From: Macrostomum lignano
Taxonomy: Eukaryota
Length of the DNA stretch: 64,000 nucleotides
NCBI GenBank assembly: GCA_002269645.1
Contig: NIVC01001776.1
Location: 275,990-339,989, forward strand
Direction: 5' to 3'
This document shows positions 3,001 through 64,000 of this stretch, one piece after another; within the stretch, counting starts at the first letter, position 1; every line of letters begins with the position of its first letter. Below the pieces are notes generated by a model, which was not told where the DNA came from, did no database searches, and saw only the letters and a list, made by a program, of their open reading frames with translations. Position numbers and translations under genes: made by a program.

Positions 3001-3087
3001 TTCGATCCAACGATTCCAAGGCGTGTGTGGCTGTCCTGGGTGGGCGAGAAACACGCGTGGCTCGGAAATGCGCAGACTCGTCGCCAT
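1..3087 (-). pseudogene. gag-pol pseudogene of the Gypsy element
   Basis: Split over several frames (ORFs 2641-3180, 2187-2636, 1837-2232, 1016-2086, 882-1100, 48-623). There is an in-frame TGA at 684-686 in RNase H (LRIHR*NDRLL), and the RT catalytic motif reads SVDD instead of YxDD. Confidence 0.88.
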
Positions 3088-3223
3088 GTTGTACTTTGAG
3101 GCAGCGTGGCCGAATGAATAAGATGCGAGAAGCGATTGCAGGGTAGAAAAATCACAAAGGCTTGGAAGGCCGGTGCGCACTTATATTATAATTAAACTAC
3201 TAACCAGCGTGATTCAGCAAACA
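3077..3223 (-). promoter_or_regulatory. primer-binding site (3086-3077) and putative short 5' LTR (~3223-3087)
   Basis: Minus strand reads ...GTACAACA|TGGCGACGAG. TGGCGACGAG complements the 3' end of eukaryotic tRNA-Ser(GCU) (...CUCGUCGCCA) and directly follows a CA LTR end. The LTR start at TGTT (3223) is a guess because the second LTR is outside the window. Confidence 0.55.
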
Positions 3224-3339
3224 TCAACCCCCCCCCCCCACCCGGCCTAGGCCGGTCTGGGCAGACAGACAAACCCCCCAGCCAATCAGATCGCGAGAAC
3301 TCTAGGCGGCGTGCGAGCCGCATACACAACAAAATAGAC

Positions 3340-3611
<272 letters not shown>

Positions 3612-3615
3612 GCAC

Positions 3616-7681
<4,066 letters not shown>

Positions 7682-8276
7682 TGGCTGACGCGGCGAGTGC
7701 ACGCCGCACCAGCGCTTTTTAAGCACCAATTGGGAGTGAAATTCCGAATACTGCAGATTTGCATTAGCTGGGAAATGTGGGAAATGTCAAATCTAGCAAG
7801 CCTAAATATAAGGATACTGGATCCTAATCCTAATGCGCAAATTGCCACAACTTCGAACAAATGTTTTATAGTCCTGGCAGTAAAAATACTATAAAATGTC
7901 TATATTTCTACTAGCAGTAGCTGACGCGCAAATGTGCTTCAAAATGATTTCATAGTTTTCACTTATGAAATGTATGATGGACACTTAATCTAAGGGTTGA
8001 TAATTATTTAAAAGTAAAAATAATATCGAAAAAATTTATGCAAATAAAATCAGTTTGCACCGATTGCTGTTATATTCATTTTCAATCAAAAATGGTGTTC
8101 AAATAAAGTAAAATCAAAAGTCTGTTAGTAAAAAATTACTAAAACTTGTAAAATTGTTACCGTGATTAGGCGCAAATAAACAAATTGACCGGGAAATCGC
8201 CAAATAATTCTAAGCTCATTCACGGAATGATTCAAAGAGAATTTGTTCAAATTGCTCAGTCAAAGTCACGTGACTA

Positions 8277-10379: not shown

Positions 10380-11834
10380 CTGAAAAGTGCACGAGTACTT
10401 TAACCGTACCTTTAGCGTATACTTGTGCTTAGTGCTAATGTACTTGAATTTTAGGTACACACGCACTCATGTATTTGGTGCAGGTTATGTACGCGTATTT
10501 AATTAGTGCTTGCGTACTTGATCAATTGTACTAAAAAGTGCACGCGTACTAAAAAAGTGCACGCGTACTTTTTAACTTAACGTGTTTTTTTAGAGTCCGC
10601 CTACTTGTAAGCGTACTTTCACTGCTAGCCTATATTCTAAGAAGCATTAATAATTGTATTGGTAAATATTTTAACTTCAAAAAATGACTAATAACCAAGG
10701 ACACTTTGGATTTTTGCTTTTTTCAGTAGCCAGTAAGAAATGACCAGGCATCCGTGCGAATTTTATTTTTCATGAATAGAATGATATATAATAATATGAA
10801 TAACAAAAAGCACTAAACAGAATGTGCTAATTTAATGAATAATTTTAACATTTAATGCGGCAGGCACGGTACATAGCTGGAAACGGGGAACAAAGACGAC
10901 TAAGCGCTGCTAGTTAAAGCAAGCACAGAGAGACAGTAGTAGAGCAGTAGTATGATTGCATTATTGCAGCAAATTGCTTTTTTTCTAATTATTCTATATA
11001 GGGATATAATAATAATTGTGAACATTAGCTCACACAATATCCACGTATCACATTATTTTCAGGTAGAATAACATCTGTACACACAATGGCAACAAAAATG
11101 CTAGAATTTTGTGCTGAAGAAAAATTTCTAACTATCCCTACTAGTATAAGTAGGAGATATGCACACTATTTTGGTAGAAGAATGCATAATAATAAAATTA
11201 AACCAATCGAATGCTTGATGAAGCATTGTAAATAAAGCAATTTTTATCTATTATAAATATTTAAAACAATACAATATTTATAACTAAAATCCAACAAAAT
11301 CCTGACAGAACAGTCTTAGAAAAAAAATTATTCATTAAAACAAAATGAGTTAATTTTTATACATATAGAACATTGATAACGGATGAACAAACGAAATGAT
11401 GAAAAGATGACCACAACGCATGTATTACTAACAGTAGCTTTGTAATAATAGGCTAGCAGTAGTAGCAATTGTATTCAATTTCAAGATAAAAATTATAACA
11501 AAACGCGATATATAAATGTACATACTACTGTTAGTATGTATAAATAATAATATAATAACAAGAATGCCGCATATAGTTATTAAAAAGGATTAGTCCATGC
11601 AGATTAACTATTGCAATATTGAGGGAATCAAACCGCAAGGCTAAAATGAAAGTAAAAAACGCAAAAGTAAAGTATTAACAAAGGATGCTAACTTTTTCAA
11701 ATTTTGAATTTGAATTTTGCTATAAACAGGTAAACGGCCGGAGTAAATTTGATTCAATTTCTGCCTCGTCATCTAATTAGTAACTAAAACTCAAACTAAA
11801 ATTAGCTCTAAAAGCCAGTAAATAAATAAACTAA

Positions 11835-14800: not shown

Positions 14801-15722
14801 TCCCCAGTCTGACACAGCCCACAATCCCCAGTCTGACACAGCCCACAATCCCCAGTCTGACACAGCCCACAATCCCCAGTCTGACACAGCCCACAATCCC
14901 CAGTCTCACCAGCCCATGCGAAGGCAGCAAGCAGTCGGCAATCTCGGTCGACGAGTTCCGCATCGCCGCAGTGTCGCCAACTCCGACCGTCGCCATCGCA
15001 AAGTCTTCGTCTTCAACTTGATCGCTGACAGCAACGCCGTTGACGGAGCCGACGGTTAGGTCGCCAGTTCCCCGACGGTGATTCGAGACACCAGCCTCGT
15101 CAGCGCGACCGTCATCTTCCATGTCCCCAACTACGCAATCATCATCCTCCTCATCATCAAAATCGCCCAGACGAAGATTCCGCCGAGGCCGCCGATGTCG
15201 AAGGCTCAGACGTTGATGTTGAAGGCGAAGATTCTGTTGACAAGGCGCCGCGGCCACGCCAAGGTCCGGATCGCCCTCCGGCCGGGCCTGATCGTGATGA
15301 AGCCGAGGCTGAGTCCGCACACCGGAGCCGCTGCCAACGGTGACATTTTTCACATTGTGCTGAGTCTGATAGTGCTCAGACAGGCTCGGCTCAGTATTAT
15401 TAGTTTCGCTCAGGTCGTCTGAACAGGTGAAATCGCAGAATGCGCAAGCGCTAGTGACCAGCGCCTCGTTGCTAACAGTTGACCGGGATAGAATCTTCAC
15501 TGGCACCGGCTCCACATCCCTATGCCAAGCTCTGGCGTGCTCAACTAGCAGCGACTGATGGGTGCCAACCAGGCCGCAGGCCTCGCACTGGTAGAACACT
15601 ATCCCGGATGCCTGCCTGTGCGTGTGACAGTGCTCTAGCAGCCGGCTGACTGACAGGGTCAGGAATTGGCAGTGCGAACAGTGCAGCACTTGCACGTGGC
15701 AGGGGTCCAGGTTTAGTACCAT
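11835..15722 (-). CDS. C2H2 zinc-finger protein, 582 aa (3 N-terminal atypical + 4 C-terminal fingers)
   Basis: Exons 15722-14910, 13823-13343 and 12289-11835 are phase-consistent (0, then 1). Fingers: CSHC..HCHTH, CEAC..HARAWH, CAFC..HYQTQH; CDKC, CAEC, CDVC, CGQC with HxxxH/HxxxxH. The linker is acidic and Ser-rich. Confidence 0.85.
12339..13238. repeat. 22-bp minisatellite containing two telomeric hexamers, ZF intron 2
   Basis: About 41 copies of AGGGTTAGGGTTGCTCTGGTAC. Confidence 0.97.
13915..14906. repeat. 24-bp minisatellite, ZF intron 1
   Basis: About 41 copies of CAGTCTGACACAGCCCACAATCCC, starting at the donor (14909). Confidence 0.97.
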
Positions 15723-17236: not shown

Positions 17237-17716
17237 TTGTTAGACTGCTGCAGACTGTGGTGGTGGAACTGGAGATACACAAATTCCTCTCAGAGCTGCT
17301 AATTGGCCAGAAAGATGACGTGATTAAAGCGTGAGAAATGATAACAACCATGATAGTACTACATCCCACAAACTGGATTTCGAAGCAGGGATCGGCGGAT
17401 TTTTTACGTCAAAGGCCAGATATAGAATCAAGCTCATGGCTGCGGGCCATATGAAAGTGAAAAGGAAAAAGAATAGACTATTAGAAAGGGAGGAGGGGCG
17501 AGAGGGGCATAAGAGAAAAGATAGATATCAGGAGAGACGAGGGGGTTGAGGAGAGAGCAGAGAATATGGGACGAAGAAGCGAGAGGAGAGAAGAGAGAGG
17601 GGAGAGGAAATAGTAGAGGTGAGAAGATGGAGAGAGAAGAGTCGAGAGATGAGACAGATGATCGATGAGAGAGGAGAGTAGAGAAGAGTGAGAAGAGATG
17701 AGAGAACAGAGAGGTA

Positions 17717-17753
<37 letters not shown>

Positions 17754-17772
17754 TGAGAAGATGAGATAAGAG

Positions 17773-17865
<93 letters not shown>

Positions 17866-19385
17866 GAGAAGATGAGATAAGAGATAAGAGAGAGAGAGAG
17901 ATTTGAGAAAGAAGAGAGGAGAAAGGAGAGATGATAGAGTAAAGGGAAGAGGAAGAGAGAGGAAAGAGATGAGATTGTAGAGATGAGAGAGATGAAAGAA
18001 AAGATGATCGAGAGAGTAGAGATGAGAGATGAAGAAAGAGAGAGCAGAGTGCAGAGAGACGAGAGAAGAAAATAGAGGGGAGAGAGTATAGAAGATGGAA
18101 GAGAAGAGAGGAGTAAGGAAAGAGAGGAGTCAGAAGAGGGGAAGAGAAGAGTACACAGTAGAGAGGAGAGTAGAGATGACAGAAGAGAGAGGGGAATGAG
18201 GGAGCAAAGATGAGAGTGAACAGACGATATAAGAGAGAAGAGAGGAGAGTGGAGAGAGAAGAGAGAAGACAAGAGAGGGAGAGTATAGAAGAGAGAAGAG
18301 AAGAGACGAGAAGAAATAAGAAAGGAAAGAGAGTCCTGAGTCAAAAAAGGGGAAAGAGATGAGTACAAGAGAGAGGTGAGGGAACATATGAGAGTAAAGA
18401 TGAGAGATGAGAGAGGGGAGATGAGAGAGCAGAAACGAGAGTGAACAGACGAGAGATGGGAGAGTAGAAAGAAAAGAGGAGAGATATGAAATAATAGATG
18501 AGAGGTGGAGACAGGGGAGAGATGAGAAGTGAGTGAAGAGAGAGGAGGGGAATGGAGAGAATCTAGAGGACAGTGAAACTGGTGAAAGGGACGAGAGAGG
18601 AGAGGAAAGAGGGAAGAGATTAGAGAGAAGAGAGATAGGACAGGAGAGAGCAGAGAGATGAGAGGAGAGAGAGAGGGGGAGAGAGAGAAGATAGAAATGA
18701 GAAAAGATAAGAGAGAGAGAGAAGATAAAAGAAGAGATATGAGAGATAAGAGAGCAAAGACGAGAGAGAAGGGAGGTGAGGGAAGAGACGATAGAAGAGA
18801 TGAGAGCAGAGAGCGGACAGAGGAGAGGAGAGAGTTGAGAGAAGAGAGGAAAAATGAGAGTTGAGAGAAGAGAGGAAAAGGAGAGAGTAGAGACGAGGGA
18901 AGTGTTGAGAGAGGGTAGAGTAAGGAGTGAGAAGAGGGGAGAGGGAAGAGAGAGTAGAGAGCAGAGAGAAATGAGAAGAGATAAAAGAGGAGAAAGAAGA
19001 TATGAGAGACCAGAGAGAAGAGAGGAGAGGAGAAAAAAAGAATAGAGAGAAGAGGGGAGAGAGGAGAGAGGACAGAGGAGAGAAGAAAGAAGAGATAAGA
19101 GGAGAGAGAGAGAAGAGCCGAGAGAGAAGATAGGAAACAGAAAAGAAGATGGAAGTTTCAAAGGATGCAAGGGACATAGGTAGAGGCGGAGGCAGAGGCC
19201 AGAGTTTGCCTGACATTCTGTGCAGTACCCCAGCCAACAATATCAATGCTTGCTTTAAATGCTAATTTTACACGAATGTGCACTCTATTTTGTGTTTAAC
19301 TCCATCCTAACTATTAACAAGTTTTTGTTTGAGTTTGACCTCAGATTTCAGAATACATGCAAAAATAATTCCGGGGAATGGAGTT
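17237..19385. repeat. dispersed element with long polypurine (GA-rich) core, copy 1
   Basis: Both flanks (GGTTGTTAGACTGCTG...GGAGATACACAAATTCCTCTCAG; GAAGTTTCAAAGGA...TTAACAAGTT) are homologous to 44503-46095. The core ~17500-19150 is almost all A/G. Confidence 0.85.
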
Positions 19386-23365: not shown

Positions 23366-23461
23366 GACTTAAATTGTTGATGGTGGGAATTCGCTGTGGG
23401 ATCGAGGAGTGGGAAGACTGGTGATTCTATTTAGGGGGATTGCAAGGATACGAATTGAAGG

Positions 23462-24590
23462 GAGTGGGGCTGCAGGGAGAGGGATTGAAGGGAGACGGAT
23501 TGAAGGGAGAGGGATTGAAGGGAGACGGATTGAAGGGAGACGGATTGAAGGGAGACGGATTGAAGGGAGACGGATTGAAGGGAGACGGATTGAAGGGAGA
23601 CGGATTGAAGGGAGACGGATTAAAGGGAGACGGATTGAAGGGAGACGGATTGAAGGGAGACGGATTGAAGGGAGACGGATTGAAGGGAGACGGATTGAAG
23701 GGAGACGGATTGAAGGGAGACGGATTGAAGGGAGACTGATTGAAGGGAGACGGATTGAAGGGAGACGGATTGAAGGGAGACGGATTGAAGGGAGACGGAT
23801 TGAAGGAAGACGGATTGCAGGGAGACGGATTGAAGGGAGACGGATTGAAGGGAGACGGATTGAAGGGAGACGGATTGCAGGGAGACGGATTGAAGGGAGA
23901 CCGATTGAAGGGAGACGGATTGAAGGGAGACGGATTGAAGGGAGACTGATTGAAGGGAGACGGATTGAAGGGAGACGGATTGAAGGGAGACGGATTGAAG
24001 GGAGACGGATTGAAGGGAGACGGATTGAAGGGAGACGGATTGAAGGGAGACGGATTGAAGGGAGACCGATTGAAGGGAGACGGATTGAAGGGAGACGGAT
24101 TGAAGGGAGACGGATTGAAGGGAGACGGATTGAAGGGAGACGGATTGAAGGGAGACGGATTGAAGGGAGACGGATTGAAGGGAGACGGATTGAAGGGAGA
24201 CGGATTGAAGGGAGACGGATTGAAGGGAGACGGATTGAAGGGAGACGGATTGAAGGGAGACGGATTGAAGGGAGACGGATTGAAGGGAGACGGATTGAAG
24301 GGAGACGGATTGAAGGGAGACGGATTGAAGGGAGACGGATTGAAGGGAGACGGATTGAAGGGAGACGGATAGAAGGGAGACGGATTGAAGGGAGACGGAT
24401 TGAAGGGAGACGGATTGAAGGGAGACGGATTGAAGGGAGACGGATTGAAGGGAGACGGATTGAAGGGAGACGGATTGAAGGGAGACGGATTGAAGGGAGA
24501 CGGATTGAAGGGAGACGGATTGAAGGGAGACGGATTGAAGGGAGACTGATTGAAGGGAGACGGATGAAAGGGTGAGAGATTTCAGGGAGG
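23462..24590. repeat. 15-bp minisatellite (GGGAGACGGATTGAA) upstream of USP
   Basis: About 74 highly homogeneous copies; the source of the spurious (LPSIR)n/(IEGRR)n ORFs. Confidence 0.97.
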
Positions 24591-25459
24591 GGGATTGCAG
24601 GCAAAACAAGCAATCAGAAATCTCCAGGTACATGACAAGGAGACATTTCTGTATAACTGTCTACAAAGGGCATCAATGCCAGTATTAAAATGCTCAGAAG
24701 AGAAGCAGTTTCCTACTACTCACCTGGAAGTGCAAAGTACAAAAGCAGAAATATTTTACAAACAGGCAAGCCGTAAAGCAGTTGTTTAGTCTTCCGCTGT
24801 CTGGGACCAGGGGACTGGATTTTATAGCGGCGTTGGCTGCCAGTATTTTATACCGAGTGCGTTATCACACTACTCGATGAACTTCTACAATGAAGGCGGT
24901 CTCAGCTGCGCAGAGAAAAAATATTCGCATTAAAAAAACTAAATGAGCCACTCGGTTCAGAGATAGCGGAAAAAGCTAGCCATGTTTTGTCAAGATTGCA
25001 ACAATGACTGACAACCGCTATTTTTTAAGCGGGCTAAATAACATGGCGAACAACAAAGGTTGACCTTGTCAATCAATTCTCTAATCAGCATGAGGCAGTG
25101 GCGTGATAAGTTCAGAGCCAACAGCTGCATTTCTTATCAGTGACAAATAATCTTGTTTAAAAAAGCTTTGACACTTTTTAGATCAAGTGCATCATGCCAC
25201 CCAGGCATGAACACAGGCATTGACTCTATGGGACATAACCAATTCATGCTAAGAAACTTACTTGAATGACTTGGGAATATGAATATGATTAATATGATAA
25301 CAAGTTAAAAGTTATATTTTATTTACATTACATTGACAGTTATTCCCTTGAATAAGCGCAATGAATAACAAATAAGACAGAAAAAGAAGGCAAGAAGTGA
25401 AAAATACAATTAACTGCATCGAAAAACCCTTGACATTTCACCATCTGAACATTCCACAC

Positions 25460-25836: not shown

Positions 25837-32238
<6,402 letters not shown>

Positions 32239-33148: not shown

Positions 33149-33783
33149 CTACTTGTCCCCATTAGCCGCAGTTGTACATTCCGCACTTGTTCCATCAGCA
33201 CTATCCGGCACATCAAAGTTAAATCGGAAATCAAACAATTTCTTAGCGGGTTTCTCAACAGCTGACTCTGCGGCAATCTGGTCGCTCTGCTGCTCGTCAG
33301 TTGAATTAGACGCCTCAGAGAGGACGCAGGTTCGAACCGCGTGTCCAGCAGGTGTGCCTGGCCGACTGACTGCGGACGCGTGCTGCTGACGGGCCAACTC
33401 TGCTCGCATCTTGGCTCGATAGTCGCCCAGATGCTGGCGCATTGCCTGCCGCTTCTGCAGCTTGCTGGCACCGGCGCTGCTGAGCACGCGAATTGCGGCC
33501 AGCTCAGACTCCAGCTGACGTCTCGGCGTGCCACCGCCGCTGGCACTCCCCGAGCTTCTCTGCTTCTCCATCCGATTAGCGGCCGTGAGTCTCAACCGTT
33601 CGAGGCACCAGGACAACTCCAATTCGTAATTGTACTCGTCTGCCGATTGCTGCTGCTGCTCATCGCCTACCAGCTGCGGTTCCTCGGAGGAAGCGGAAGC
33701 GGATGAAGCGGAAGCGGATGAGGAACCCAACGGCTGAGGTCGCTTTGGCGGCCTCGCATTGATTGGTTTATTGGGTCGTCTGG
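33149..33783 (-). CDS. C8orf33: UPF0488 / C8orf33 homologue (main exon; 5' exon uncertain)
   Basis: YELELSWCLERL...AIRVLSS...KLQKRQAMRQHLGDYRAKMRAE and a C-terminal FRFNF match the C8orf33 family pattern (ELAWCVEQL...KRQLM...FGDYRAQM...FRFNF). The frame is open upstream to an acceptor near 33783. Confidence 0.78.
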
Positions 33784-44502: not shown

Positions 44503-44647
44503 GTTGTTAGACTGCTGGAGTGCAGTGGAGCTGGAGATACACAAATTCCTCTCAGGGCTGCAAATTGGAGGAGAAAGAAGAGAGATGAAATGAGGAGAAG
44601 AGAGAGTAGAAAGTAGAGATGAGAGAGATGAGATGAGACAGAGAGAG

Positions 44648-44743
<96 letters not shown>

Positions 44744-46095
44744 TAGATGAGATGGGAGAGAGAGGGAAGAGGAGAAAGTAGAGATGAGAGAGAAGAGAGT
44801 AGAGATTAGAGAGTGGAGAGAGAGGAGAGAGGAGAAAGTAGAGATGAGAGAGAAGAGATTAGAGATTAGAGAGTGGAGAGAGAGGAGAGAAGAGATTGGA
44901 AGAGAGGAGTCATAAGAGGGGAAAGAAAATAGTACAGAGGAGAGATTTGAGAACATATAAGAGTAAAGATAACAGAATAGAGAGTAGAGATGATCGAGAG
45001 AGCAGATACGAGAGTGAACAGACGACAGATGGTAGAATAGAGAACAGCGGAGATAGAAGTGATAAGAGAGAATCTATTACAGACACGAAAGCAGAGAGGA
45101 GAGACAAAGGGAGAGAGAGAAGTGGAGTGAGGAAAGAGGAGAAAAGATGGGAGAGAATCGAGAGCAAAAGGGAGAGAGGGGAAAGGGAGAGACAGGGGAG
45201 AGGAGAGGAAAGAGAAGAACGGAGAGGGGAGAGAATATAGTAAGGAGATGAGAGATGGGAGAGCAGAGAACAGAGAGATGAGTGGAGAGATAAGAGCGAG
45301 GGAGAGAGAGATGGAGAGGAGAGGTGAGAGTAGTGGGGGAAGTTGAGAGAGGAGAGATGATAAAAGGAGACTACAGATCAGATAATGAGAGAGAGTATGA
45401 GGCAGGAAAGATATATTACAGAGGATTGAGATGAGAGAGGAGAGAGTAAAGAGATGATAGAAGAGATGAGAGACGAGAGCAGATCGGGGGAGAGTAGAGA
45501 GAAGAGATCGGAGAGAGGAGAGAAGTGGGAAGTGTCAAGAAAGAGGGGAGAGTGAGGAGTGAGAATTTATACAGAGGGGAGAGAGAATAGAGAGTAGAGA
45601 GCAGAGATAAATAAGAAGAGATAAGAGAGCAGAAAATAAGAAGAGAAAGGAGAGATGATAAAGCAATGAGAGAGAAGAGAGTAGAAAAACCAAAGAAAGA
45701 TAAGGAGAGACAAGAGAAGATCGGGGAGAAGGAAGAAATAAAGGAGAGAGGAAAAAAGAGATGAGATGAGATGGGAGGGAAAGGATGAGAGACGATAGAG
45801 AAGAGAGGAAACAGTAGAGAATTGACTGAAGTTTCAAAGGAATCTAGGGACGTAGGGAGGCGCAGGGACAGAGGCCGGAGTTTGCCAATACTTGTTTTAA
45901 GACAGACATTGCCTGACATTCTTGGGCAACACCACAAGCCAACATGTGATTAATGCTTGTCTCAAATTCTAATTTTATACGAACTTATACTCCACTTTTA
46001 TTTTTAACTCTATCCTATAATTATTAACAAGTTCTGTGTTTGAGTATAACTTCATATTCTGGAACACAAGCAAAAGTAGTTCCGGCTGGGATTGG
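44503..46095. repeat. dispersed element with long polypurine core, copy 2 (inside inner MULE)
   Basis: Flanks are homologous to 17237-19385; the GA-rich core is ~44570-45830. Confidence 0.85.
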
Positions 46096-53877: not shown

Positions 53878-54370
53878 AAGCCGTAGTTTTCTATATCTTA
53901 ACGCATCTGAGCGGGTGTAGCACTTCCGCGCTTGCTTTCACAGGCCTAAACTTTCTAAGAATATGCTGTGTAAACTCGTATGTTGACTGAAAGACGTTAA
54001 CAAGGTCTCAACGTGATTTCTAGTTTTGAATTTGTCCTTATCTGTTCGTCATTATTTTCCCGACAGCCATGCAGGGGTAGGAAACTAAGGAATGGAATCG
54101 AGGATGGAGAACGTTTGTAACTGTCCGCGTGAAGGGAATTAATGACGGGTGTCTTGGAGCGCTCCAACCGCTGTCATCCGATGCTAGTTTCTGTTCGTCT
54201 TCTTTGTTTGCGTTGCTATGGGAGGAATTTGCAGCTTCCCTGCATGTTACCTGCCTTGAAACCATGGATAAAAGCCTGTGATATCACAGCTCTATCAAAG
54301 CCCTGCTCTCTGCATGTTTCACCATGACACCTTGATCGTCACACTAAAAGCGTCAAACTCTACAAAAACT

Positions 54371-55141
54371 ATGGCTATCTGCAATCAAGCTATCATTGTG
54401 GCCACTGCTGCTGCACTGCTTGTCCTGGCTATTCTTGGTGCCGCAGCTGGTAGCCAAGGACTGTCCAACTACCAAAGCATCGAGGGCAGCCTGTGCATCA
54501 GGCCTGAGTTCGTGCAGTCTCACCCGCGAGCTGCCAGCAAGATCGAGTGCGCCGCCCTGTGCAGCGGCAACCAGCGCTGCCAGGCATTCAGCACAGCCGA
54601 CTCTCCGTGCCAGCTGTTCGTGTTCGACAGGTGCAGCAAGTCGGTGAAGAACTGCGGCTGCTCCAGGAGAGGCCGCGTGTTTGTGAAGCAGCAGCCGGGA
54701 CTGCGGCCGGGCGCTCTGTGTCCGGCTGGCTACGGAGACGACCTGTGCGGAGTGAAGTACAAGCTGCTGGCTGAGGCTGGAAGCTGGTGGCTGAGCAGAC
54801 AGAAGTGCGAGGCGGAGCTCGGGCTGGTGATCATGGCCGACGTGATGGACGACGCTGAGATGAATAAAATCGAGCTTATAAGGAACAAAAACGGTTTGTT
54901 TGGTCATTCAATTTTTCTAGGAGGCTTCCAAACTACCAACAGCACTGAGCCGGGCGGTGGCTGGTACTGGGTCGGCTGCAACATCACCCTGGATGGAACT
55001 CTGTGGAACAGTCTGGAGCCTAATAATTATGCGAATGCTGAAGCTGCTGTTGGCTTTTACCAATCTAGGAGCCGCCTTGCCGACTTAAAAGAGGCCGACA
55101 GTTTCAAAAGTCTATGCGAGTGCCTATCACCATTTGAGTGA
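54371..55141 (+). CDS. secreted PAN/apple + C-type lectin domain protein, copy 1 (256 aa, intronless)
   Basis: Signal peptide AIIVATAAALLVLAILGAAAG; PAN ECAALCSGNQRCQAF..CQLF; CTLD SWWLSRQKCEAE, IFLGG, WYW, EPN, LAD, SLCE. The ATG is at 54371 (the ORF track starts earlier). Confidence 0.88.
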   Translation: MAICNQAIIVATAAALLVLAILGAAAGSQGLSNYQSIEGSLCIRPEFVQSHPRAASKIECAALCSGNQRCQAFSTADSPCQLFVFDRCSKSVKNCGCSRRGRVFVKQQPGLRPGALCPAGYGDDLCGVKYKLLAEAGSWWLSRQKCEAELGLVIMADVMDDAEMNKIELIRNKNGLFGHSIFLGGFQTTNSTEPGGGWYWVGCNITLDGTLWNSLEPNNYANAEAAVGFYQSRSRLADLKEADSFKSLCECLSPFE

Positions 55142-56204
55142 GCTACCAAATTCCACATGAAAATCTCTGGAAGGCGATTATAGTTATTCCGCATGCGAGA
55201 AACTTTTCGAAACTTTTTGAAACTTTGTAGCCAAAAAACTGTTTCTTCTTTGTTACGTACATGTAATGTGACGACACCATTTTCTCTCTATAGTGTATAC
55301 CGATTCAACCGCAGAACTAGGTGTGGACTTCTGTTTCATTGAATTGACTGTAATTATATCTGTATTTTTATATCTATTGGCAGAATGTTGTAACGAATTA
55401 TTTTTCCATAATTTTCTGGCGCATTCAAATGTATTTCAATATTAAATTAGTTCTCACTTCTTCGTAGATGAAATCAAAATTTCTATTTAAACATTGGAAT
55501 TAAATTGTTCTACCGATGAAAATTGCAACTTAGGTGAGCAGCAGTGAATTGATTCCACTAAATAAAATAAACTGGATATTGGCATCGGTGAAAATACTAA
55601 ATCTAGGAGCAGTTTCTCGTAAATAAAAAGTATAGCTGCAAGCTAAACTGAAATCATAGAGCCACGCGTTGCTCAGTAAGCATGCGCTGTTGAGACAATT
55701 GAACACCTCATGGGACTTCTCTGTACAAGCTATGCTAAGTCAGTGTGGTTAAATGCATTGCTTTGCATGAAAAAAACATCAGCTTTTTAGATTGAGAAAA
55801 TGTCTTATATCATCGGCACCTACTATAATTTCCAGATTTCAGTTATGAAACAGGGAAAATCAAACACTCAAAGCTTCTTTACAAACGCACCCTCACATTC
55901 TTCAGTGTTTTCACGGGGACGCAAACATAAAGTTTTCTTGCGGCAAACTTTTCCTGCAGGAGGTTTTCTCACAGGAACCTCTCCAGCACAGATTCTCTCC
56001 CGCCAGTCTTTGCTTTGCTTCCAATATATTTATCAGTTTGCAAACCAGGGATTAGAACGCCTAGGACTTACTATGAGTAGGTTGCATGTAGGAAACAGTT
56101 TTACCCACGCATATACTACACTTTACACTGCACATTGCACATTGCCTTGACTAGCATGTAAGGCATGCATGTGTACATCGTATTCTCTTTTTATGATCCC
56201 AGCA

Positions 56205-57357
56205 GGAGGCGGGAAACCTCGCTGAGGGAAACCTCTCTGCGGGAAACCTCGCTGAGGGAAACCTCTCTGCGGGAAACCTCGCTGAGGGAAACCTCTCTGC
56301 GGGAAACCTCGCTGAGGGAAACCTCTCTGCGGGAAAACCTCGCTGAGGGAAAACCTCACTGAGGGAAAACCTCACTGAGGGAAAACCTCGCTGAGGGAAA
56401 ACCTCGCAGAGGGAAAACCTCACTGAGGGAAAACCTCGCTGAGGGAAAACCTCACTGAGGGAAAACCTCACTGAGGGAAAACCTCGCTGCGGGAAACCTC
56501 GCTGAGGGAAAACCTCGCTGCGGGAAAACCTCGCTGAGGGAAAACCTCGCTGAGGGAAACCTCGCTGCGGGAAAACCTCTGCGGGAAACCTCTGCGGGAA
56601 ACCTCGCTGAGGGAAAACCTCGCTGAGGGAAACCTCGCTGCGGGAAAACCTCTGCGGGAAACCTCGCTGAGGGAAAACCTCGCTGCGGGAAAACCTCGCT
56701 GAGGGAAAACCTCGCTGAGGGAAACCTCGCTGCGGGAAAACCTCTGCGGGAAACCTCTGCGGGAAACCTCGCTGAGGGAAAACCTCGCTGAGGGAAACCT
56801 CGCTGCGGGAAAACCTCTGCGGGAAACCTCGCTGAGGGAAAACCTCGCTGCGGGAAAACCTCGCTGAGGGAAAACCTCACTGAGGGAAAACCTCGCTGAG
56901 GGAAAACCCCGCTGCGGGAAACTCGCTGCGGGAAACCTCGCTGAGGGAAAACCTCGCTGAGGGAAAACCTCGCTGAGGGAAAACCCCCTGCGGGAAACTC
57001 GCTGCGGGAAACCTCGCTGAGGGAAAACCTCGCTGCGGGAAAACCTCTCTGCGGGAAACCTCGCTGAGGGAAAACCTCGCTGCGGGAAAACCTCGCTGAG
57101 GGAAAACCTCGCTGAGGGAAAACCTCGCTGAGGGAAAACCTCTGCGGGAAACCTCGCTGAGGGAAAACCTCGCTGCGGGAAAACCTCGCTGAGGGAAAAC
57201 CTCGCTGAGGGAAAACCTCACTGAGGGAAAACCTCGCTGAGGGAAAACCCCGCTGCGGGAAACTCGCTGCGGGAAACCTCGCTGAGGGAAAACCTCGCTG
57301 AGGGAAAACCTCGCTGAGGGAAAACCCCGCTGCGGGAAACTCGCTGCGGGAAACCTC
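56205..57357. repeat. 15-16-bp minisatellite (GGGAAA(A)CCTCGCTGA) between the lectin genes
   Basis: About 70 variant copies with higher-order repeated blocks. Confidence 0.96.
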
Positions 57358-58294
57358 GCGTGCTCAAATCAAATTCAACGGAGCCATCTACATTAGATTC
57401 AAGGAAAGCTTATATTTGGGAACTTATTGGTGGGGACAGTTTCATTCTGATCGAGTAACAACTCGTTAACTCCCCGGGGAACACAAGGTCATTGTTTTTA
57501 TATTATATAATCTAAATTACATTAGAAATCACGGTTCTGTGCGTCTGAGCCACAGTTTTTGAGCTGCTAGATCAGTAGCTCTACTTGTCTACTTCTCGGC
57601 TGTCAGTTGGGTCCCGCGGGGCCGCCTGTCTGAAAATTGACTTAACACCGCATGCGAGTTGCAACTCAAAGAAAGCAAATTACGTCTGAATTAACTTTTT
57701 ACTCTCAGATTTCTGTTGCTTCTAAACTTGATATAAAGCCTGGCAGCAGAATACAGGACTATCCATGGGAGTGACGGAAGCATTTTCTATGCAGCCCTTA
57801 AAAGCTTTCAACCCGCGGAAAACATTTCGAGGTTCCGTTGTAAAGGCGGCCTTCAAGTTTCTTTGACTTTACGCTTCTGAGCGGATGTACATGTAGCTAG
57901 CACTTCCTCTTGCGAGTACATGAGTACAATGTATAGGCGTGAAAACTTCCAACAAAGAAATAGTAAAGACGATGAGGACAGGAATTTATTGCAGCTTAGA
58001 TCGACGGCAAAGTCCTGATGGTTATCGAAAGTTTTCCTAAACGCGAGAGAAGTTCCTGGAGTGCCGAGAAAGATTCGGCTGGCTACCTACTCGGAACCAA
58101 ATCCAGTTCTGGCCCGCTAGCTTTTCTGCAGGAGATGATTCTCTTCGTCCGCTATTTTTGCAAAGGCAGGATAGCACCGCTTCCGTGTTTCACATGGATG
58201 AAATAAGGATAAAAGCTGTGGGATCCGCATTGCTCGGCTCCCTGCTTCACCCGCATTGATCGTCACACTAAAAGCGTCAAACTCTACAAAAACT

Positions 58295-59065
58295 ATGGCT
58301 ATCAGCAATCAAGCTATCATTGTGGCCACTGCTGCTGCACTGCTTGTCCTGGCTATTCTTGGTGCCGCAGCTGGTAGCCAAGGACTGTCCAACTACCAAA
58401 GCATCGAGGGCAGCCTGTGCATCAGGCCCGAGTTCGTGCAGTCTCACCCGCGAGCTGCCAGCAAGATCGAGTGCGCCGCCCTGTGCAGCGGCAACCAGCG
58501 CTGCCAGGCATTCAGCACAGCCGACTCTCCGTGCCAGCTGTTCGTGTTCGACAGGTGCAGCAAGTCGGTGAAGGACTGCAGCTGCTCCAGGAGAGGCCGC
58601 GTGTTTGTGAAGCAGCAGCCGGGACTGCGGCCGGGCGCTCTGTGTCCGGCTGGCTACGGAGACGACCTGTGCGGAGTGAAGTACAAGCTGCTGGCTGAGG
58701 CTGGAAGCTGGTGGCTGAGCAGGCAGAAGTGCGAGGCGGAGCTCGGGCTGGTGATCATGGCCGACGTGATGGACGACGCTGAGATGCAGCGCGTGGAATC
58801 TCTCTGGCAAGCTCAAGTTGTAAGCGATTCGATCTGGCTTGGAGGCTATCAGCCACCCGGCAGTCCTGAGCGGGATGGTGGCTGGTACTGGGTCGGCTGC
58901 AACCTCACTGTGGACCGCTCTCTGTGGGCCGCTAATGAGCCCGACAATAACGACGAAAAGGACAATGTTGTGGGCAGATACTACGGCAAAACTGGCCTAG
59001 CCGATTTATTCGAGTCAGAAAGCAACTACAGAGCCTTTTGCGAGTGCGTGTCGCCATTCGACTAA
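58295..59065 (+). CDS. secreted PAN/apple + C-type lectin domain protein, copy 2 (256 aa, intronless)
   Basis: Same architecture and length as copy 1; IWLGG, WYW, EPD, LAD, AFCE. Confidence 0.88.
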   Translation: MAISNQAIIVATAAALLVLAILGAAAGSQGLSNYQSIEGSLCIRPEFVQSHPRAASKIECAALCSGNQRCQAFSTADSPCQLFVFDRCSKSVKDCSCSRRGRVFVKQQPGLRPGALCPAGYGDDLCGVKYKLLAEAGSWWLSRQKCEAELGLVIMADVMDDAEMQRVESLWQAQVVSDSIWLGGYQPPGSPERDGGWYWVGCNLTVDRSLWAANEPDNNDEKDNVVGRYYGKTGLADLFESESNYRAFCECVSPFD

Positions 59066-59304: not shown

Positions 59305-60015
59305 AGAAACCCCGCCGGCGGAGGGGGAGGGGGCGCCCACTAACTGACACGATACAGAACGTACACACGCGGCGGGGGGGCGCCCACCTAACCGACACGA
59401 TACAGAACGTACACACGCGGCGGGGGGCGCCCACCTAACCGACACGATACAGAACGTACACACGCGGCGGGGGGGCGCCCACCTAACCGACACGATACAG
59501 AACGTACACACGCGGCGGGGGGGGCGCCCACCTAACCGACACGATACAGAACGTACACACGCGGCGGGGGGGCGCCCACCTAACCGACACGATACAGAAC
59601 GTACACACGCGGCGGGGGGGGGCGCCCACCTAACCGACACGATACAGAACGTACACACGCGGCGGGGGGGGCGCCCACCTAACCGACACGATACAGAACG
59701 TACACACGCGGCGGGGGGGGCGCCCACCTAACCGACACGATACAGAACGTACACACGCGGCGGGGGGGGCGCCCACCTAACCGACACGATACAGAACGTA
59801 CACACGCGGCGGGGGGGGCGCCCACCTAACCGACACGATACAGAACGTACACACGCGGCGGGGGGGCGCCCACCTAACCGACACGATACAGAACGTACAC
59901 ACGCGGCGGGGGGGCGCCCACCTAACCGACACGATACAGAACGTACACACGCGGCGGGGGGGGGCGCCCACCTAACCGACACGATACAGAACGTACACAC
60001 GCGGCAGGGGGGGCG
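59305..60015. repeat. ~48-bp GC-rich minisatellite with variable G run
   Basis: About 14 copies of GCGCCCACCTAACCGACACGATACAGAACGTACACACGCGGC(G)n with no unique spacers. Confidence 0.96.
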
Positions 60016-60831
60016 CACAGAAGGAGCGTGCTTGGGCACAAAAGCCGGTTTGCTCAAGTGCAAGCCTATCGCAAACCGCAGCCTATGAGAATTTAACATT
60101 TCAATACATTAAATACATGATATTCTCAACACTTGCTACAGTTATCAAGATTCAAAACTCGAGAACAATTATTGTTTCTGCTTAATTAAACAAATCAGTA
60201 AATAAAATTTGACAGTTAATTTATCTCATCGTTTATTAAACTCTATAGATTTTAAATACTATCGCTAAATGGTTTGTTAAAATAATTAGGGGCTACTAAA
60301 ACACAAGTGACAAAGTAGATTTTTTTGCATAGAAAACTTTAATACATAATAAAAAAATCAAAACAGAAACCAAATCCAAAAGAATTGATGGGCTTGGCTT
60401 GTCAGCGACTATTTGCTTTGTAAATCATACTTAATTTTTATTTGAAGTCATAATTTTTCGCTCTATAAATGCATTTGCAAGATAGAATTTTTCGGGTTTC
60501 TTTAAACAATTTCCAAACTAATGAAATGTCGATAGGTATAATAAATTTTTACTTTTGTTTGTTTTTCTCACCTAGGGTTGTAGGTCGGGGGTTCGATTCT
60601 CCCCAGTAACTAAAGTAACTAAGTAACTTCAGTAACTAAACTGAACCAACAATCAACTTAGTGAAAAATCCTTATCTTGCTTATGAATTTCGCGGCAAAA
60701 TCAAAACTTCAAATAAATTTTCATTTCAATAAAACTACAGTAACTTTTTATCCTTCGACTACAGATGGGTCTTGGTGCTTGTCAAAGTCAGCAATCAAGG
60801 CTGATCTGATCTGCTAACTGCTCAGAATTGC

Positions 60832-62795
60832 TCAGAGTTTCCCACCGCTTGGTTCGCGCCCGCCGGGCTGCAGCAGGCCGGAGTCAAGCGACGGCTCCCA
60901 GATAATTTTCTGCACCTCTTTGAAGTGCGGGTGCGAGGCGTCGCGAAGCAGAGCCAAGACTGCCGACTCCGATGTGGTCAGCCAGCACCCTGCCGACTTC
61001 ATCCGGTCCAGGGCGTACATTCTGAATGGGGGATTAATGACAGAAGTATGCATGAGTAGAGAGCCACGTTATTGATTTACCTCACGATTACTTCTGGTTG
61101 AGGTACTCAAAAGGGGGGGGTTGAGTCAACCTAAGGATCTGGGAGACTGACAGTGACAACATGAGGATCTGGCAGTGTGATCTAACATGAAGATCTGGCA
61201 GTGTGATCTAACATGAGGATCTGGCAGTGTAATCTAACATGAGGATCTGGCAGTGTGATCTAACATGAAGATCTGGCAGTGTGATCTAACATGAGGATCT
61301 GGCAGTGTAATCTAACATGAGGATCTGGCAGTGTGATCTAACATGAGGATCTGGCAGTTTTATCTAATATGAGGATCTGGCAGTGTGATCTAACATGAAG
61401 ATCTGGCAGTGATCTAACATGAGAATCTGGCAGTGATCTAACATGAGAATCTGGCAGTGTGATCTAACTTGAGGATCTGACAGTGACTCAACATGAGGAT
61501 CTGACAGTGACTCAACATGAGGATCTGACAGTGACTCAACATGAGGATCTGGCAGTGACTCAACATGAGGATCTGGCAGTGACTCAACATGATGATCTGA
61601 CAGTGACTCAACATGAGGATCTGACAGTGACTCAACATGAAAATTCTTGAGAAAGTTCAGCCTCAAACTCTGGAATGTAGATTTTTAACTGACAAAACTT
61701 AAATTTAAACAGCAACTATTGAAAATATATTTTTAAAAACTACTGACAAGGCTCTGTCCTCACCTGTCCACCGGATTCCTGGAACTAACAGCATCAACAA
61801 TCACGTGCACCTGAAAATTCTTCTCGAGCAGGTCCAGACTTGTTTGCTGAACGCAGGCGTGAGCTTCGATGCCGCACAGCAGAACCGAGTCAATTTCGGA
61901 CGGTAGGGCGGACATGACGGCATTGACGCACATTGAGAACTGGGTCTTGTCTATAACAGTGACTACTGAGAGGTCGCCGAGTTCAGGAACTGTATGACCG
62001 AGACCTGGAATGCCATCAGGGTAGAGATGCCTGCTGAGTCATTGAGTCGTGAGTAGAGGGTAGATATGCCTGCTGAGTCATTGAGTAGGTGAGTAGGGGG
62101 TAGAGATGCCTGCTGAGTCATTGAGTAGGTGAGTAGGGGGTAGAGATGCCTGCTGAGTCATTGAGTAGGTGAGTAGGGGGTAGAGATGCCTGCTGAGTCA
62201 TTGAGTAGGTGAGTAGGGGGTAGAGATGCCTGCTGAGTCATTGAGTAGGTGAGTAGGGGGTAGAGATGCCTGCTGAGTCATTGAGTGGTAGAGATGCCTG
62301 CTGAGTCATTGAGTAGGTGAGTAGGTGGTAGAGATACCTGCTGAGTTATTGAGTGGTAGAGATGCCTGCTGAGTCATTGAGTCGTGAGTAGGGGGTAGAT
62401 ATGCCTGCTGAGTCATTGAGTAGGTGAGTAGGGGGTAGAGATGCCTGCTGAGTCATTGAGTAGGTGAGTAGGGGGTAGAGATGCCTGCTGAGTCATTGAG
62501 TCGTGAGTAGGGGGTAGAGATGCCTGCTGAGTCATTGAAAAGGGAGAAAGACTGCAAATAGATAACTCCAATGTCAGAAATGTGAATCAATGCCACACTC
62601 ACCTTTGGGATACTGCTCAGTGACAAAGACTGGCATCTTTATTATCTGACAGGCTCGCAGCATCCGAGAAGAAGTGTCAACAATGGCAGGAAAGTGAGTG
62701 ATTGTTTTCCGGAATTTCTCTTGCATGTCACACAAAAACAGGGCTGTGCGATTGGAGTTGAGCTTGCCAACACAGCGTACCACTGCAGATGCCAT
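60832..62795 (-). CDS. ISOC2: isochorismatase domain-containing protein (ISOC2-like), 207 aa
   Basis: Exons 62795-62603, 62004-61764 and 61021-60832 (624 nt, phases match). Motifs [62 protein letters not shown] short N-terminus favours ISOC2 over ISOC1. Confidence 0.9.
61140..61640. repeat. 24-26-bp minisatellite, ISOC intron 2
   Basis: GAGGATCTGGCAGTGTGATCTAACAT and CAGTGACTCAACATGAGGATCTGA units. Confidence 0.93.
62020..62537. repeat. 40-bp minisatellite, ISOC intron 1
   Basis: About 13 copies of GTAGAGATGCCTGCTGAGTCATTGAGTAGGTGAGTAGGGG. Confidence 0.95.
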
Positions 62796-62900: not shown

Positions 62901-64000
62901 CGAGAGAGGGCTGTCAGAAAAGTTTTGCTTATTGACCAATATATATATTTGTAAGTTACGTAACGAAATGCGGCTAAGCCCAGGCCACTGCCTGGTATAT
63001 AAAGTGCCTGTTACAAAAATGGCTTGAAATCTCGAAACCTAGCTTTACAGCAGACAATTTACAAGTCCTATTATGAACACCTCCGTTTTGCAAAAAAAGC
63101 TTCTCTAAAGAAGACAAACGAACCAGTATCAAGTTTCATAACTTGCTTGGGCTGTCTCCAACAGAGACACACGCCAGCATGCATCGAGCCATGGCATGAG
63201 ACTCTTGCCCGTCATGACACTATTCGTCGCTGGATGGCAGGTGTTCTTGACGGCAAGGAGGACGTTCATGACGAACCTCGAAGTGGAAGGCCCTGTTCAG
63301 CGCGAACAACACAGTTGGCGCAGAAGGTGGAAGCTGCTCTGCAAGAGGATCGCCGTGTCACCACTAATCAGCTGGCTGAGTCTACAGTCTACTGGCATGT
63401 CTCATGACAAAATCCATAAGGTGCTGACTGAAGCTCTTGGAGTCAGGAAGATTTGCGCGAGGTGGGTGCCTCACATCCTGTCAGAGGAGCAGAATGTCTG
63501 CTGCACACTGAGTCTACTGGCGTGTCTCATGACACAATCCATAAGGTGCTGACTGAAGATCTTGGAGTCAGGAAGATTGGCGCGAGGTGGGTGCCTCACA
63601 TCCTGTCAGAGGAGCAGAAGGTCTGCCGCACAACTCTCAGAGCAGCTCATCTGCAAAGACACAGGCGCGAGGGGCTTCAGTTTCTTCAGAGAATCGTGGC
63701 TTGTGATGAGACTTGGGCTCACTCGCGGGAGGCTGAACTGAAGCGGCAGAGCGCATCTTGGTGCCGGCCTGGCTCTCCAAGGCCAGTGAAGGCTGCGGGG
63801 AGCATTGCTCAGCTGGAAATCATGCATGTGACTTTCTTTGATCGCGAGGGCATCATCTTCGATCAGGCTGTTCCTGCCAGCCGGACAGTCAATGGTGACT
63901 ATTATCTGCAAGTGCTGCACAAGGTGCAAAGAGCCATTCGCGACAAAAGGCCAAGCTTGCACGCCCACGGCCCAATCCTGCTGCAAGACAACCAGGGTTT
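62901..64000 (+). mobile_element. mariner (DD34D) transposon, disrupted, truncated by window edge
   Basis: TA|CGAG..GGGCTGTCAGAAAAGT mariner-like end. The transposase pieces read DEPRSGRP, EDRRVT, ARWVPHIL, CDETW, TVNGDYY and LLQDN. Frameshifts, a 7-bp duplication and a 125-bp duplication disrupt it. Confidence 0.9.

What the first reader, a model, noticed from the sequence alone, without database searches (positions are those of the whole stretch)
54266..59065. Lectin gene pair: ~99% identical 5' two-thirds, abruptly divergent sugar-binding third (EPN vs EPD)
Seen: from ~38 bp before the ATG to codon 164 (54862 / 58786) I count about 5 substitutions in ~530 nt. After ...DDAEM the proteins share only the framework (LGG, GGWYWVGCN, EP, LAD, CE, SPF), yet both are 256 aa. 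Upstream DNA is unrelated except a conserved GGATAAAAGC(C)TGTG box (54266 / 58207). Known: EPN typically marks mannose/glucose preference, and EPD variants occur in invertebrate lectins with altered specificity. Inference: old paralogues whose constant part is homogenised by gene conversion while the binding module is kept diverse, a constant/variable cassette system for immune or gamete recognition.
Basis: partly seen in the sequence, partly recalled or inferred. Interest (0 to 1): 0.7.

Follow-up and report, generated by a model that had tools for sequence, protein, structure and literature searches.

The report
Gene-conversion mosaic in flatworm lectin pair
Two neighbouring flatworm genes for small secreted lectin-like proteins have had their front two-thirds copied onto one another by gene conversion while their sugar-binding ends stay anciently different: a clean but ordinary example of a well-known process.

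Summary
Two intronless 256-codon genes (54371-55141 and 58295-59065, + strand) share a 531-nt tract (54332-54862 = 58256-58786) with exactly 5 differences. Identity then falls to about 55%. Synonymous divergence jumps from dS 0.018 to about 1.1, and the breakpoint statistic is 228 against at most 25 in 200 permutations. The flanks are unalignable apart from a TATA-like box.

The proteins have a signal peptide, a probable PAN/apple module and a C-type lectin-like domain. The closest fold match is codakine. The only close relatives found are Macrostomum lignano proteins. The break lies inside the lectin domain, at the start of helix alpha2.

Best explanation: interlocus gene conversion between two old tandem paralogues. 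The tract ends where the whole family switches from a conserved to a fast-evolving module, so loss of homology can stop it there without any special mechanism.

Not shown: selection for diversity (dN/dS about 0.4), a specificity switch from EPN to EPD (the WND asparagine is alanine in both copies), or an immune or gamete role. Evidence for a recurrent breakpoint is mixed. One protein-level case agrees; the one M. lignano tandem pair seen as DNA is not homogenised.

This is a new member of a known kind, of modest interest.

The parts
54371..55141 (+). Gene A: intronless CDS of 256 aa (stop included). It encodes a signal peptide or anchor, a PAN/apple-like module and a C-type lectin-like domain with an EPN motif.
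   Evidence: ORF. Profile hits to codakine CTLD (E = 2e-5) and Eimeria MIC5 PAN (E = 3e-4). AF2 model of residues 110-256 has pLDDT 79.8. Foldseek best hit is codakine 2vuv, TM 0.76/0.86.
58295..59065 (+). Gene B: intronless CDS of 256 aa (stop included). Same architecture as gene A, with an EPD motif.
54332..54862 (+). Converted tract in copy A: last 39 nt of the 5' UTR plus codons 1-164 (signal peptide, PAN module, and the first part of the CTLD up to the start of helix alpha2).
   Evidence: 5 differences in 531 nt against copy B. dS 0.018.
58256..58786 (+). Converted tract in copy B.
54863..55138 (+). Anciently diverged third of A: most of alpha2, beta2, the long-loop region with EPN (55016-55024), LAD in place of WND (55076-55084), and CEC (55115-55123). 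GC3 is 0.50, against 0.76 in the tract.
   Evidence: dS 1.13, dN 0.48, 44% aa identity to B. Motif coordinates.
58787..59062 (+). Anciently diverged third of B: EPD (58937-58945), LAD (58997-59005), CEC (59039-59047). GC3 is 0.62.
54266..54275 (+). TATA-like box GGATAAAAGC of gene A, 105 nt before the ATG.
   Evidence: Identical 10-mer in both copies. Similar GAATAAAAG lies 75 nt before the ATG of homologue P0003 in L001. The core-promoter role is inferred.
58207..58216 (+). TATA-like box GGATAAAAGC of gene B, 88 nt before the ATG.
54956..54982 (+). 27-nt perfectly identical island (GGWYWVGCN codons) inside the diverged third; its partner is 58877-58903. It is either a second micro-conversion or strong constraint.
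   Evidence: A-B identity is 0.84 in codons 196-210, against 0.58-0.69 in non-converted comparisons. dS is 0.25 here against more than 1.3 on both sides.
53888..53919 (+). Relic of upstream homology, collinear with 57858-57889. It is the only alignable flank beyond the promoter box.
   Evidence: blastn, 81% over 32 nt, E = 7e-4.

Best explanation
Genes A and B are two old tandem paralogues, 3.9 kb apart in the same orientation. They belong to a family of small secreted PAN/apple + C-type-lectin-like proteins. The only close database relatives found are from the flatworm Macrostomum lignano, so the window is probably from a related macrostomid.

A non-allelic (interlocus) gene conversion copied about 0.53 kb from one copy onto the other: 39 nt of 5' UTR, the signal peptide, the PAN module and the first ~40 residues of the lectin domain. 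This may have been one event or a few. About 1% divergence has accumulated since.

The tract stops at codon 164/165. That is the point at which, in every comparison within the family, a strongly conserved module gives way to a fast-evolving one. With too little similarity beyond that point to carry a heteroduplex or re-anneal, the exchange ends there. Selection against overwriting the binding loops may add to this.

Shown: the mosaic, the synonymous-site contrast, the family-wide junction, and the CTLD fold. Inferred: the recombination mechanism, the direction of transfer, the reason for the boundary, and any lectin activity.
For: (1) dS is 0.018 in codons 1-164 and 1.13 in codons 165-256. Codons with the same amino acid differ in 2 of 119 against 14 of 36 (p = 1e-8). 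Protein-level constraint therefore cannot explain the tract.
(2) Both tract ends lie inside homologous sequence, and the flanks are unalignable except for the TATA-like box and one 32-nt relic. That pattern fits a conversion patch, not a single crossover or a recent whole-gene duplication.
(3) Breakpoint statistic is 227.7, against at most 24.9 in 200 permutations.
(4) The two C-terminal thirds are as far from each other (44% aa) as from homologues elsewhere (33-45%). Pairs with that C-part divergence normally show only 55-71% identity in the N-part, not 98%.
(5) Same-amino-acid codon differences between the window's N-part and M. lignano gene g1 (13/79 and 14/81) are fewer than between the two C-parts (14/36). 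The A/B split therefore looks older than the tract's own lineage.
(6) Family-wide junction. Nucleotide identity of A or B to the non-converted homologues g1 and L001 falls from 0.76-0.82 (codons 151-165) to 0.33-0.49 (codons 166-180). The blastn alignments to g1 end at 54850 and 58797, within 12 nt of the breakpoint.
(7) GC3 is 0.76 in the tract against 0.50 and 0.62 beyond it, whereas homologue L001 is uniform at 0.71/0.725. This is compatible with GC-biased conversion.
Against: There are only two copies, so one event cannot be told from recurrent exchange, and the donor cannot be named. The tract includes the signal-peptide and 5' UTR region, which is poorly conserved in the family, so the 5' end is not obviously homology-limited. 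No reads were available to exclude an assembly or polishing artefact. NG86 dS above 1 is saturated and depends on the alignment. The lower synonymous divergence of the N-part in non-converted comparisons could partly reflect codon bias rather than age.
Confidence: 0.75

Rival explanations
1. A recurrent, selected constant/variable system. Conversion repeatedly homogenises the constant module across the family, and diversifying selection keeps the binding module different. The result is a repertoire of recognition specificities with a fixed breakpoint.
For: Units 3 and 4 of the fused model P0005 are 92% identical in the N-part and 61% in the C-part. Their first differences fall within about 3 residues of the same aligned position. 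Unit 4's C-part is closer to unit 1 (67%) than to unit 3. The motif position varies across the family: EPN, EPD, EPT, QPD, QPN and DPD. A possible second micro-tract sits at 54956-54982. GC3 is raised in the tract.
Against: The P0005 evidence is protein-only and no DNA could be fetched. The one M. lignano tandem pair seen as DNA (L002: g1 and P0152, 3.8 kb apart) is not homogenised. P0002/P0004 diverge nearly uniformly, 88% against 76%. dN/dS in the variable third is about 0.42, not above 1. A boundary set by homology explains a shared breakpoint without selection.
Confidence: 0.2
2. A recent whole-gene duplication, after which the 3' third and the flanks of one copy were replaced by recombination with a distant third paralogue. 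On this view the divergent part was imported and the similar part was not homogenised.
For: It yields the same two-gene mosaic. Mosaicism among family units is suggested by P0005, where unit 4 resembles unit 3 in the N-part and unit 1 in the C-part.
Against: It needs separate replacements on both sides, because the promoter side is also old-diverged while still weakly homologous: TATA-like box, gapped similarity over 54266-54331, and the relic at 53888. No donor paralogue is present in the window.
Confidence: 0.1
3. An assembly or polishing artefact. Reads from one paralogue were used to correct the other, or the consensus is chimeric, creating false near-identity.
For: The window is extremely repeat-rich, with about 25 minisatellite arrays. 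Neither protein is on record in independent assemblies.
Against: Five evenly spaced differences remain in the tract. The boundaries are sharp at both ends. Each copy has its own unique flanks and its own different minisatellite, and both ORFs are intact. Absence from short-read assemblies is expected, because contigs break in shared sequence of this kind.
Confidence: 0.05
4. No recombination at all: extreme purifying selection on the nucleotide sequence of the 5' part, for example from an overlapping antisense gene or an RNA element.
For: Antisense ORFs 54353-54907 and 58277-58816 coincide with the tract.
Against: The antisense ORFs follow from the complete absence of TTA, CTA and TCA codons in the GC3-rich N-part. 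The same N-part differs by 20-24% at nucleotide level from M. lignano g1, so no such constraint acts in the family.
Confidence: 0.02

Closest known systems
Partial interlocus gene conversion in the NKG2 C-type lectin-like receptor genes of mouse (Vance et al. 1999, PMC2195720)
   Same: These are clustered paralogues with a C-type lectin-like domain. One part of the gene shows no synonymous differences while the other part is old-diverged. The authors infer gene-conversion-like events affecting discrete parts of genes.
   Different: The polarity is opposite: in NKG2 the lectin-like domain is homogenised and the cytoplasmic 5' part diverges. Those are vertebrate type II receptors. Here the proteins are small, probably secreted PAN+CTLD proteins of a flatworm, and the break lies inside the lectin domain.
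Textbook partial conversion between tandem duplicates, such as human G-gamma/A-gamma globin (from my own knowledge, not checked here)
   Same: A tandem pair in direct orientation a few kb apart. The 5' segment is nearly identical, the 3' segment older, and the boundary sharp.
   Different: In gamma-globin the boundary is ascribed to a simple-sequence hotspot. Here no repeat lies at the boundary, which coincides with a family-wide conserved/variable junction in the coding sequence.
Ca2+-dependent carbohydrate-recognition CTLDs: codakine (2vuv), CEL-I, Mincle, langerin, DC-SIGN
   Same: The fold matches at TM 0.69-0.76 normalised to the query and up to 0.86 to the target. The profile hit to codakine has E = 2e-5, with the EPN motifs aligned. 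A long-loop region is present.
   Different: Pfam Lectin_C is not reached by A or B. WND is LAD in both copies. The usual Cys at beta3 is absent and a different Cys (C203 / C202) is present. An N-terminal PAN/apple-like module precedes the domain.
Secreted gene families with a conserved leader and a hypervariable mature part, such as conotoxins (from my own knowledge)
   Same: The 5' part, including the signal sequence, is conserved even at silent sites. The ligand-contacting 3' part diverges strongly.
   Different: In those families the pattern holds across many members. Here it is demonstrated at DNA level for one pair only.

Membership tests
C-type lectin-like domain (CTLD) superfamily | CTLD fold: two helices, two sheets and a long-loop region | tested here: met
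   AF2 model of A residues 110-256 has pLDDT 79.8 and pTM 0.78. Foldseek against PDB gives 491 hits at E <= 1e-3. The top 50 listed hits are all CTLDs (codakine, Mincle, CEL-I, langerin, DC-SIGN) at TM 0.69-0.76.
C-type lectin-like domain (CTLD) superfamily | Sequence membership: Pfam Lectin_C at or above its gathering score | tested here: not met
   No Lectin_C hit for A or B even at E <= 1. Family relatives P0024 (25.5 bits) and P0038 (27 bits) pass the cut-off of 22.6. The family profile hits codakine at E = 2e-5. Homology is therefore transitive, not direct.
Ca2+-dependent carbohydrate-binding C-type lectin (functional CRD) | EPN or QPD tripeptide in the long loop | tested here: met
   A has EPN (residues 216-218), aligned with codakine's EPN. 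B has EPD, a non-canonical variant. The family also shows QPD, QPN, EPT and DPD.
Ca2+-dependent carbohydrate-binding C-type lectin (functional CRD) | WND motif on beta4; its Asn and Asp are Ca2+/sugar ligands | tested here: not met
   Both copies have LAD, with Ala in place of Asn. More distant relatives keep ND: P0008 LND, P0010 FND, P0024 IND.
Ca2+-dependent carbohydrate-binding C-type lectin (functional CRD) | Measured Ca2+-dependent sugar binding | not testable with these tools
   Needs recombinant protein and glycan arrays.
PAN/apple domain | PAN fold and Cys pattern; Pfam PAN at or above its gathering score | tested here: inconclusive
   PAN_1, PAN_3 and PAN_4 hits for A and B reach only 12-14 bits, against cut-offs of 21-27. 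The family profile hits Eimeria MIC5 PAN at E = 3e-4. Relative P0061 passes PAN_1 at 25.3 bits. The low-confidence full-length model gives only PAN/apple modules as its top hits, none significant, E >= 0.04.
Interlocus (ectopic) gene conversion tract | A discrete patch of near-identity, bounded on both sides by older divergence within homologous DNA | tested here: met
Interlocus (ectopic) gene conversion tract | Homogenisation extends to synonymous and non-coding sites | tested here: met
   dS 0.018 against 1.13. The 39 nt of 5' UTR are identical.
Interlocus (ectopic) gene conversion tract | Phylogenetic incongruence between the tract and the rest of the gene | tested here: inconclusive
   Distance comparisons point that way: the C-parts are as far apart as from other homologues, and the N-part is closer to M. 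lignano g1 than the two C-parts are to each other. Too few sequences with DNA were available for trees.
Recurrent constant/variable cassette family | The same breakpoint in several independent paralogue pairs | tested here: inconclusive
   For: P0005 units 3 and 4, protein only. Against: the L002 g1/P0152 pair and P0002/P0004.
Recurrent constant/variable cassette family | Positive or diversifying selection on the variable module | tested here: not met
   Pairwise dN/dS is about 0.42 in codons 165-256, with dS saturated. This is a weak test with only two sequences.

The most novel reading that the evidence does not exclude
In macrostomid flatworms this PAN+CTLD family evolves as a true modular repertoire. 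The constant module (leader, PAN, first third of the lectin domain) is repeatedly homogenised within tandem clusters. Old, distinct binding modules (EPN, EPD, QPD, QPN and others) are preserved by selection and occasionally swapped between units. The junction is fixed at the start of helix alpha2.
Probability: 0.2. Interest if true: 0.55.

Novelty: new member of a known kind. Interest (0 to 1): 0.3.

Why it matters
It is a clean natural example of gene conversion limited by sequence similarity. Such conversion sharpens an existing conserved/variable junction inside a single protein domain and makes two old paralogues look like a recent duplicate with a swapped end. In practice, whole-gene trees or whole-gene dS values for this family would be misleading, and short-read assemblies will break or merge these genes. 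If the pattern proved recurrent across the family, it would point to an expanding recognition repertoire in a flatworm used as a model organism. None of these family members has been characterised, as far as the literature searched shows.

Tried and rejected
- Pfam on A and B gave no Lectin_C hit, so I used a profile against PDB and fold comparison instead.
- The full-length AF2 model from 6 sequences was poor, pLDDT 45. It was used only for a weak PAN hint. A domain-only model with 9 sequences worked.
- Exact-protein look-ups for A, B, P0001, P0002 and P0005 found no contigs. There is therefore no independent assembly support, and no DNA for the P0005 array.
- A word-indexed search with P0005 unit 4 returned nothing.
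- A profile search with 21 family members added only P0008, P0133 and P0152. P0152 gave the M. lignano locus L002.
- Synteny between the window and L002 was not found.
- An unequal-crossover hybrid gene was rejected because the promoter side is also old-diverged.
- Nucleotide-level constraint from the antisense ORFs was rejected because codon usage explains those ORFs.
- A trans-splice acceptor or an intron at either boundary was rejected. There is no AG at the 5' boundary. The intron of relative P0152 lies at the PAN/CTLD junction (about codon 126 in A), not at codon 164.
- No canonical AATAAA was seen downstream of either gene.


Full report
**What is there**

The window is eukaryotic and very rich in minisatellites. 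It carries ordinary metazoan genes: a TERT-like gene, a GKRP-like gene, a DEG/ENaC channel exon, a DUF4615 exon and an isochorismatase exon.

At 54371-55141 and 58295-59065, both on the + strand, lie two intronless ORFs of 256 codons. No third copy is in the window.

**The observation**

A DNA alignment shows near-identity from 54332/58256, 39 nt before the ATG, to 54862/58786, the last base of codon 164 in the motif DDAEM. That is 531 nt with exactly five substitutions. Immediately after it, identity falls to 0.38-0.67 per 15 codons.

Three tests show the contrast is not chance:
- A two-breakpoint maximum chi-square is 227.7, against a maximum of 24.9 in 200 permutations.
- Nei-Gojobori dS is 0.018 before the break and 1.13 after it, with dN 0.008 against 0.48.
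- Counting only codons that encode the same amino acid in both copies, 2 of 119 differ before the break and 14 of 36 after it (Fisher p = 1e-8).

The contrast is therefore not a matter of protein constraint. The equal length of 256 aa comes from one compensating single-codon indel in each copy.

**The flanks**

Upstream of the tract, the 50-67 nt back to the GGATAAAAGC box align only with gaps. Beyond that, only one collinear 32-nt relic is detectable. Downstream nothing aligns, and each gene is followed by a different minisatellite.

Both ends of the identical patch therefore lie within homologous but old-diverged DNA. That is the signature of a conversion patch. A single unequal crossover or a recent whole-gene duplication would not produce it.

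The box is TATA-like. A similar element lies 75 nt before the ATG of a homologue in another genome. Its role as a core promoter is inferred.

**What the genes encode**

Pfam does not recognise a lectin domain in either protein and gives only sub-threshold PAN hits.

The closest database relatives are four to seven proteins of 36-52% identity. Nearly all are from the free-living flatworm Macrostomum lignano, and UniRef labels them 'C-type lectin domain-containing protein'.

An exhaustive profile search found 957 proteins. About twenty have the same full-length architecture. The more distant of these pass Pfam's Lectin_C and PAN_1 thresholds. The family profile hits the bivalve mannose-binding lectin codakine (E = 2e-5, EPN aligned on EPN) and an Eimeria PAN module (E = 3e-4) among solved structures.

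An AlphaFold model of residues 110-256 has pLDDT 79.8. It superposes on codakine, Mincle, CEL-I, langerin and DC-SIGN at TM 0.69-0.76. The architecture is therefore:
- a hydrophobic leader, which is a plain signal peptide in the relatives;
- a probable PAN/apple module;
- a C-type lectin-like domain.

In the model the breakpoint falls three to four residues into helix alpha2. The divergent third thus holds most of alpha2, the long-loop region and strands beta2-beta5, which is all of the putative ligand-binding surface.

**Is it a working lectin?**

A has EPN and B has EPD at the canonical position. Both have LAD where canonical lectins have WND, so the asparagine that binds both Ca2+ and sugar is an alanine. 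The role of that asparagine is established knowledge of CTLDs, not tested here. More distant relatives keep ND.

Across the family the tripeptide is EPN, EPD, EPT, QPD, QPN or DPD. Sugar binding is plausible but unproven. A mannose-type versus altered specificity reading of EPN versus EPD is speculation.

**How old are the parts?**

The two C-terminal thirds are 44% identical. That is no closer than each is to homologues elsewhere (33-45%). Pairs with that much C-part divergence normally have N-parts only 55-71% identical, not 98%.

A M. lignano contig (L002, NIVC01001023.1) carries two family genes in tandem, 3.8 kb apart. The first, g1, is 76-80% identical in nucleotides to the window's N-part. 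Its same-amino-acid codons differ in 13/79 and 14/81 cases, fewer than between the window's own two C-parts. The A/B duplication therefore looks older than the lineage of the shared tract, as expected if the tract was overwritten.

**Why the tract stops where it does**

In comparisons that involve no conversion (A or B against g1, and against the homologue in L001), nucleotide identity also collapses at the same place. It falls from 0.76-0.82 in codons 151-165 to 0.33-0.49 in codons 166-180. The blastn alignments to g1 end at 54850 and 58797, within 12 nt of the breakpoint.

The family thus has a built-in junction between a strongly conserved module and a fast-evolving one. A recombination intermediate that needs sequence similarity would end there by itself. 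This is my preferred explanation of the boundary. It is an inference. It does not exclude that selection also removes tracts that overwrite the binding loops.

**Is it a recurrent cassette system?**

Evidence for:
- A fused gene model, P0005, contains at least three tandem units. Units 3 and 4 are 92% identical before the junction and 61% after it.
- Their first differences lie within about three residues of the same aligned position.
- Unit 4's C-part resembles unit 1 (67%) more than unit 3.
- A 27-nt perfect island sits in the divergent third of A and B. Its identity is 0.84, against 0.58-0.69 in other comparisons. It may be a second small tract.
- GC3 is higher in the tract (0.76) than beyond it (0.50 and 0.62), whereas a homologue is uniform. 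This fits GC-biased conversion.

Evidence against:
- The P0005 evidence is protein-only, and no DNA could be obtained for it.
- The one M. lignano tandem pair available as DNA is not homogenised at all.
- P0002 and P0004 diverge almost uniformly.
- Pairwise dN/dS in the variable third is about 0.42.

I rate the recurrent, selected system at about 0.2.

**Rivals**

- Import of the divergent third into a recent duplicate needs separate events on both sides and an unseen donor (about 0.1).
- An assembly or polishing artefact cannot be excluded without reads. It is made unlikely by the five retained differences, the sharp boundaries and the unique flanks (about 0.05).
- Nucleotide-level constraint is rejected. 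The antisense ORFs that coincide with the tract follow from the complete lack of TTA, CTA and TCA codons there, and the same region differs by 20-24% from g1.

**Comparison with what is known, and verdict**

Partial conversion between clustered paralogues is well known. In mouse NKG2 genes the lectin-like domain shows no synonymous differences while the 5' part is old, which the authors ascribed to gene-conversion-like events acting on discrete parts of genes (PMC2195720). The present case has the opposite polarity, and its boundary lies inside the lectin domain.

I found no paper linking Macrostomum with this family or with gene conversion in it.

This is a real feature: a new member of a known kind, neatly documented, of modest interest.

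Noticed in passing
window 1016-7729 (- strand): A telomerase reverse transcriptase-like gene split by introns and microsatellites. Telomerase_RBD lies at 6155-6739, and RVT_1 at 1016-2086 and 3192-3941.
   Followed up: partly
window 8277-10466 (-); 31537-32238 (-); 33149-33730 (-); 62574-62795 (-): Exons of a glucokinase-regulatory-protein-like gene, a DEG/ENaC (ASC) channel, a DUF4615 protein and an isochorismatase-domain protein. This is ordinary metazoan gene content.
   Followed up: partly
whole window, e.g. 56214-57359, 59329-60016, 12342-13239, 13918-14916, 23437-24601: About 25 minisatellite arrays with periods of 12-49 nt, plus GA-rich tracts (17575-19130, 44571-44895) that give GC skews up to 0.6. 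Each lectin-like gene is followed by a different array: a 16-mer x75 after A and a 49-mer x14 after B. Many long 'ORFs' in the window are just these repeats.
   Followed up: no
window 54353-54907 (-) and 58277-58816 (-): Antisense ORFs of 184 and 179 aa almost coextensive with the identical tract. They are explained by the total absence of TTA, CTA and TCA codons in the GC3-rich N-part. Probably not genes.
   Followed up: yes
window 54956-54982 = 58877-58903: A 27-nt perfectly identical island (GGWYWVGCN) inside the otherwise saturated third. Local dS is 0.25, against more than 1.3 on both sides. Either a second micro-conversion or constraint.
   Followed up: partly
window 63024-63900: A degenerate transposase-like remnant: an HTH_32 hit below threshold, a 125-nt tandem duplication at 63386-63632, and a weak tblastx match to L002 8915-9211.
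   Followed up: no
L002 6226-6962 and 10001-11240 (M. lignano NIVC01001023.1): A tandem pair of family genes. The first, g1, has a frameshift near 6770, which is either a pseudogene or an assembly indel. The second, P0152, has a 289-nt intron at the PAN/CTLD junction, whereas the window genes and L001 have no intron.
   Followed up: partly
P0005 (3072-aa fused gene model, source unknown): It reads through at least three complete family units and one partial P0008-like unit, so a larger tandem array of this family exists in some assembly. The units look mosaic at protein level.
   Followed up: partly
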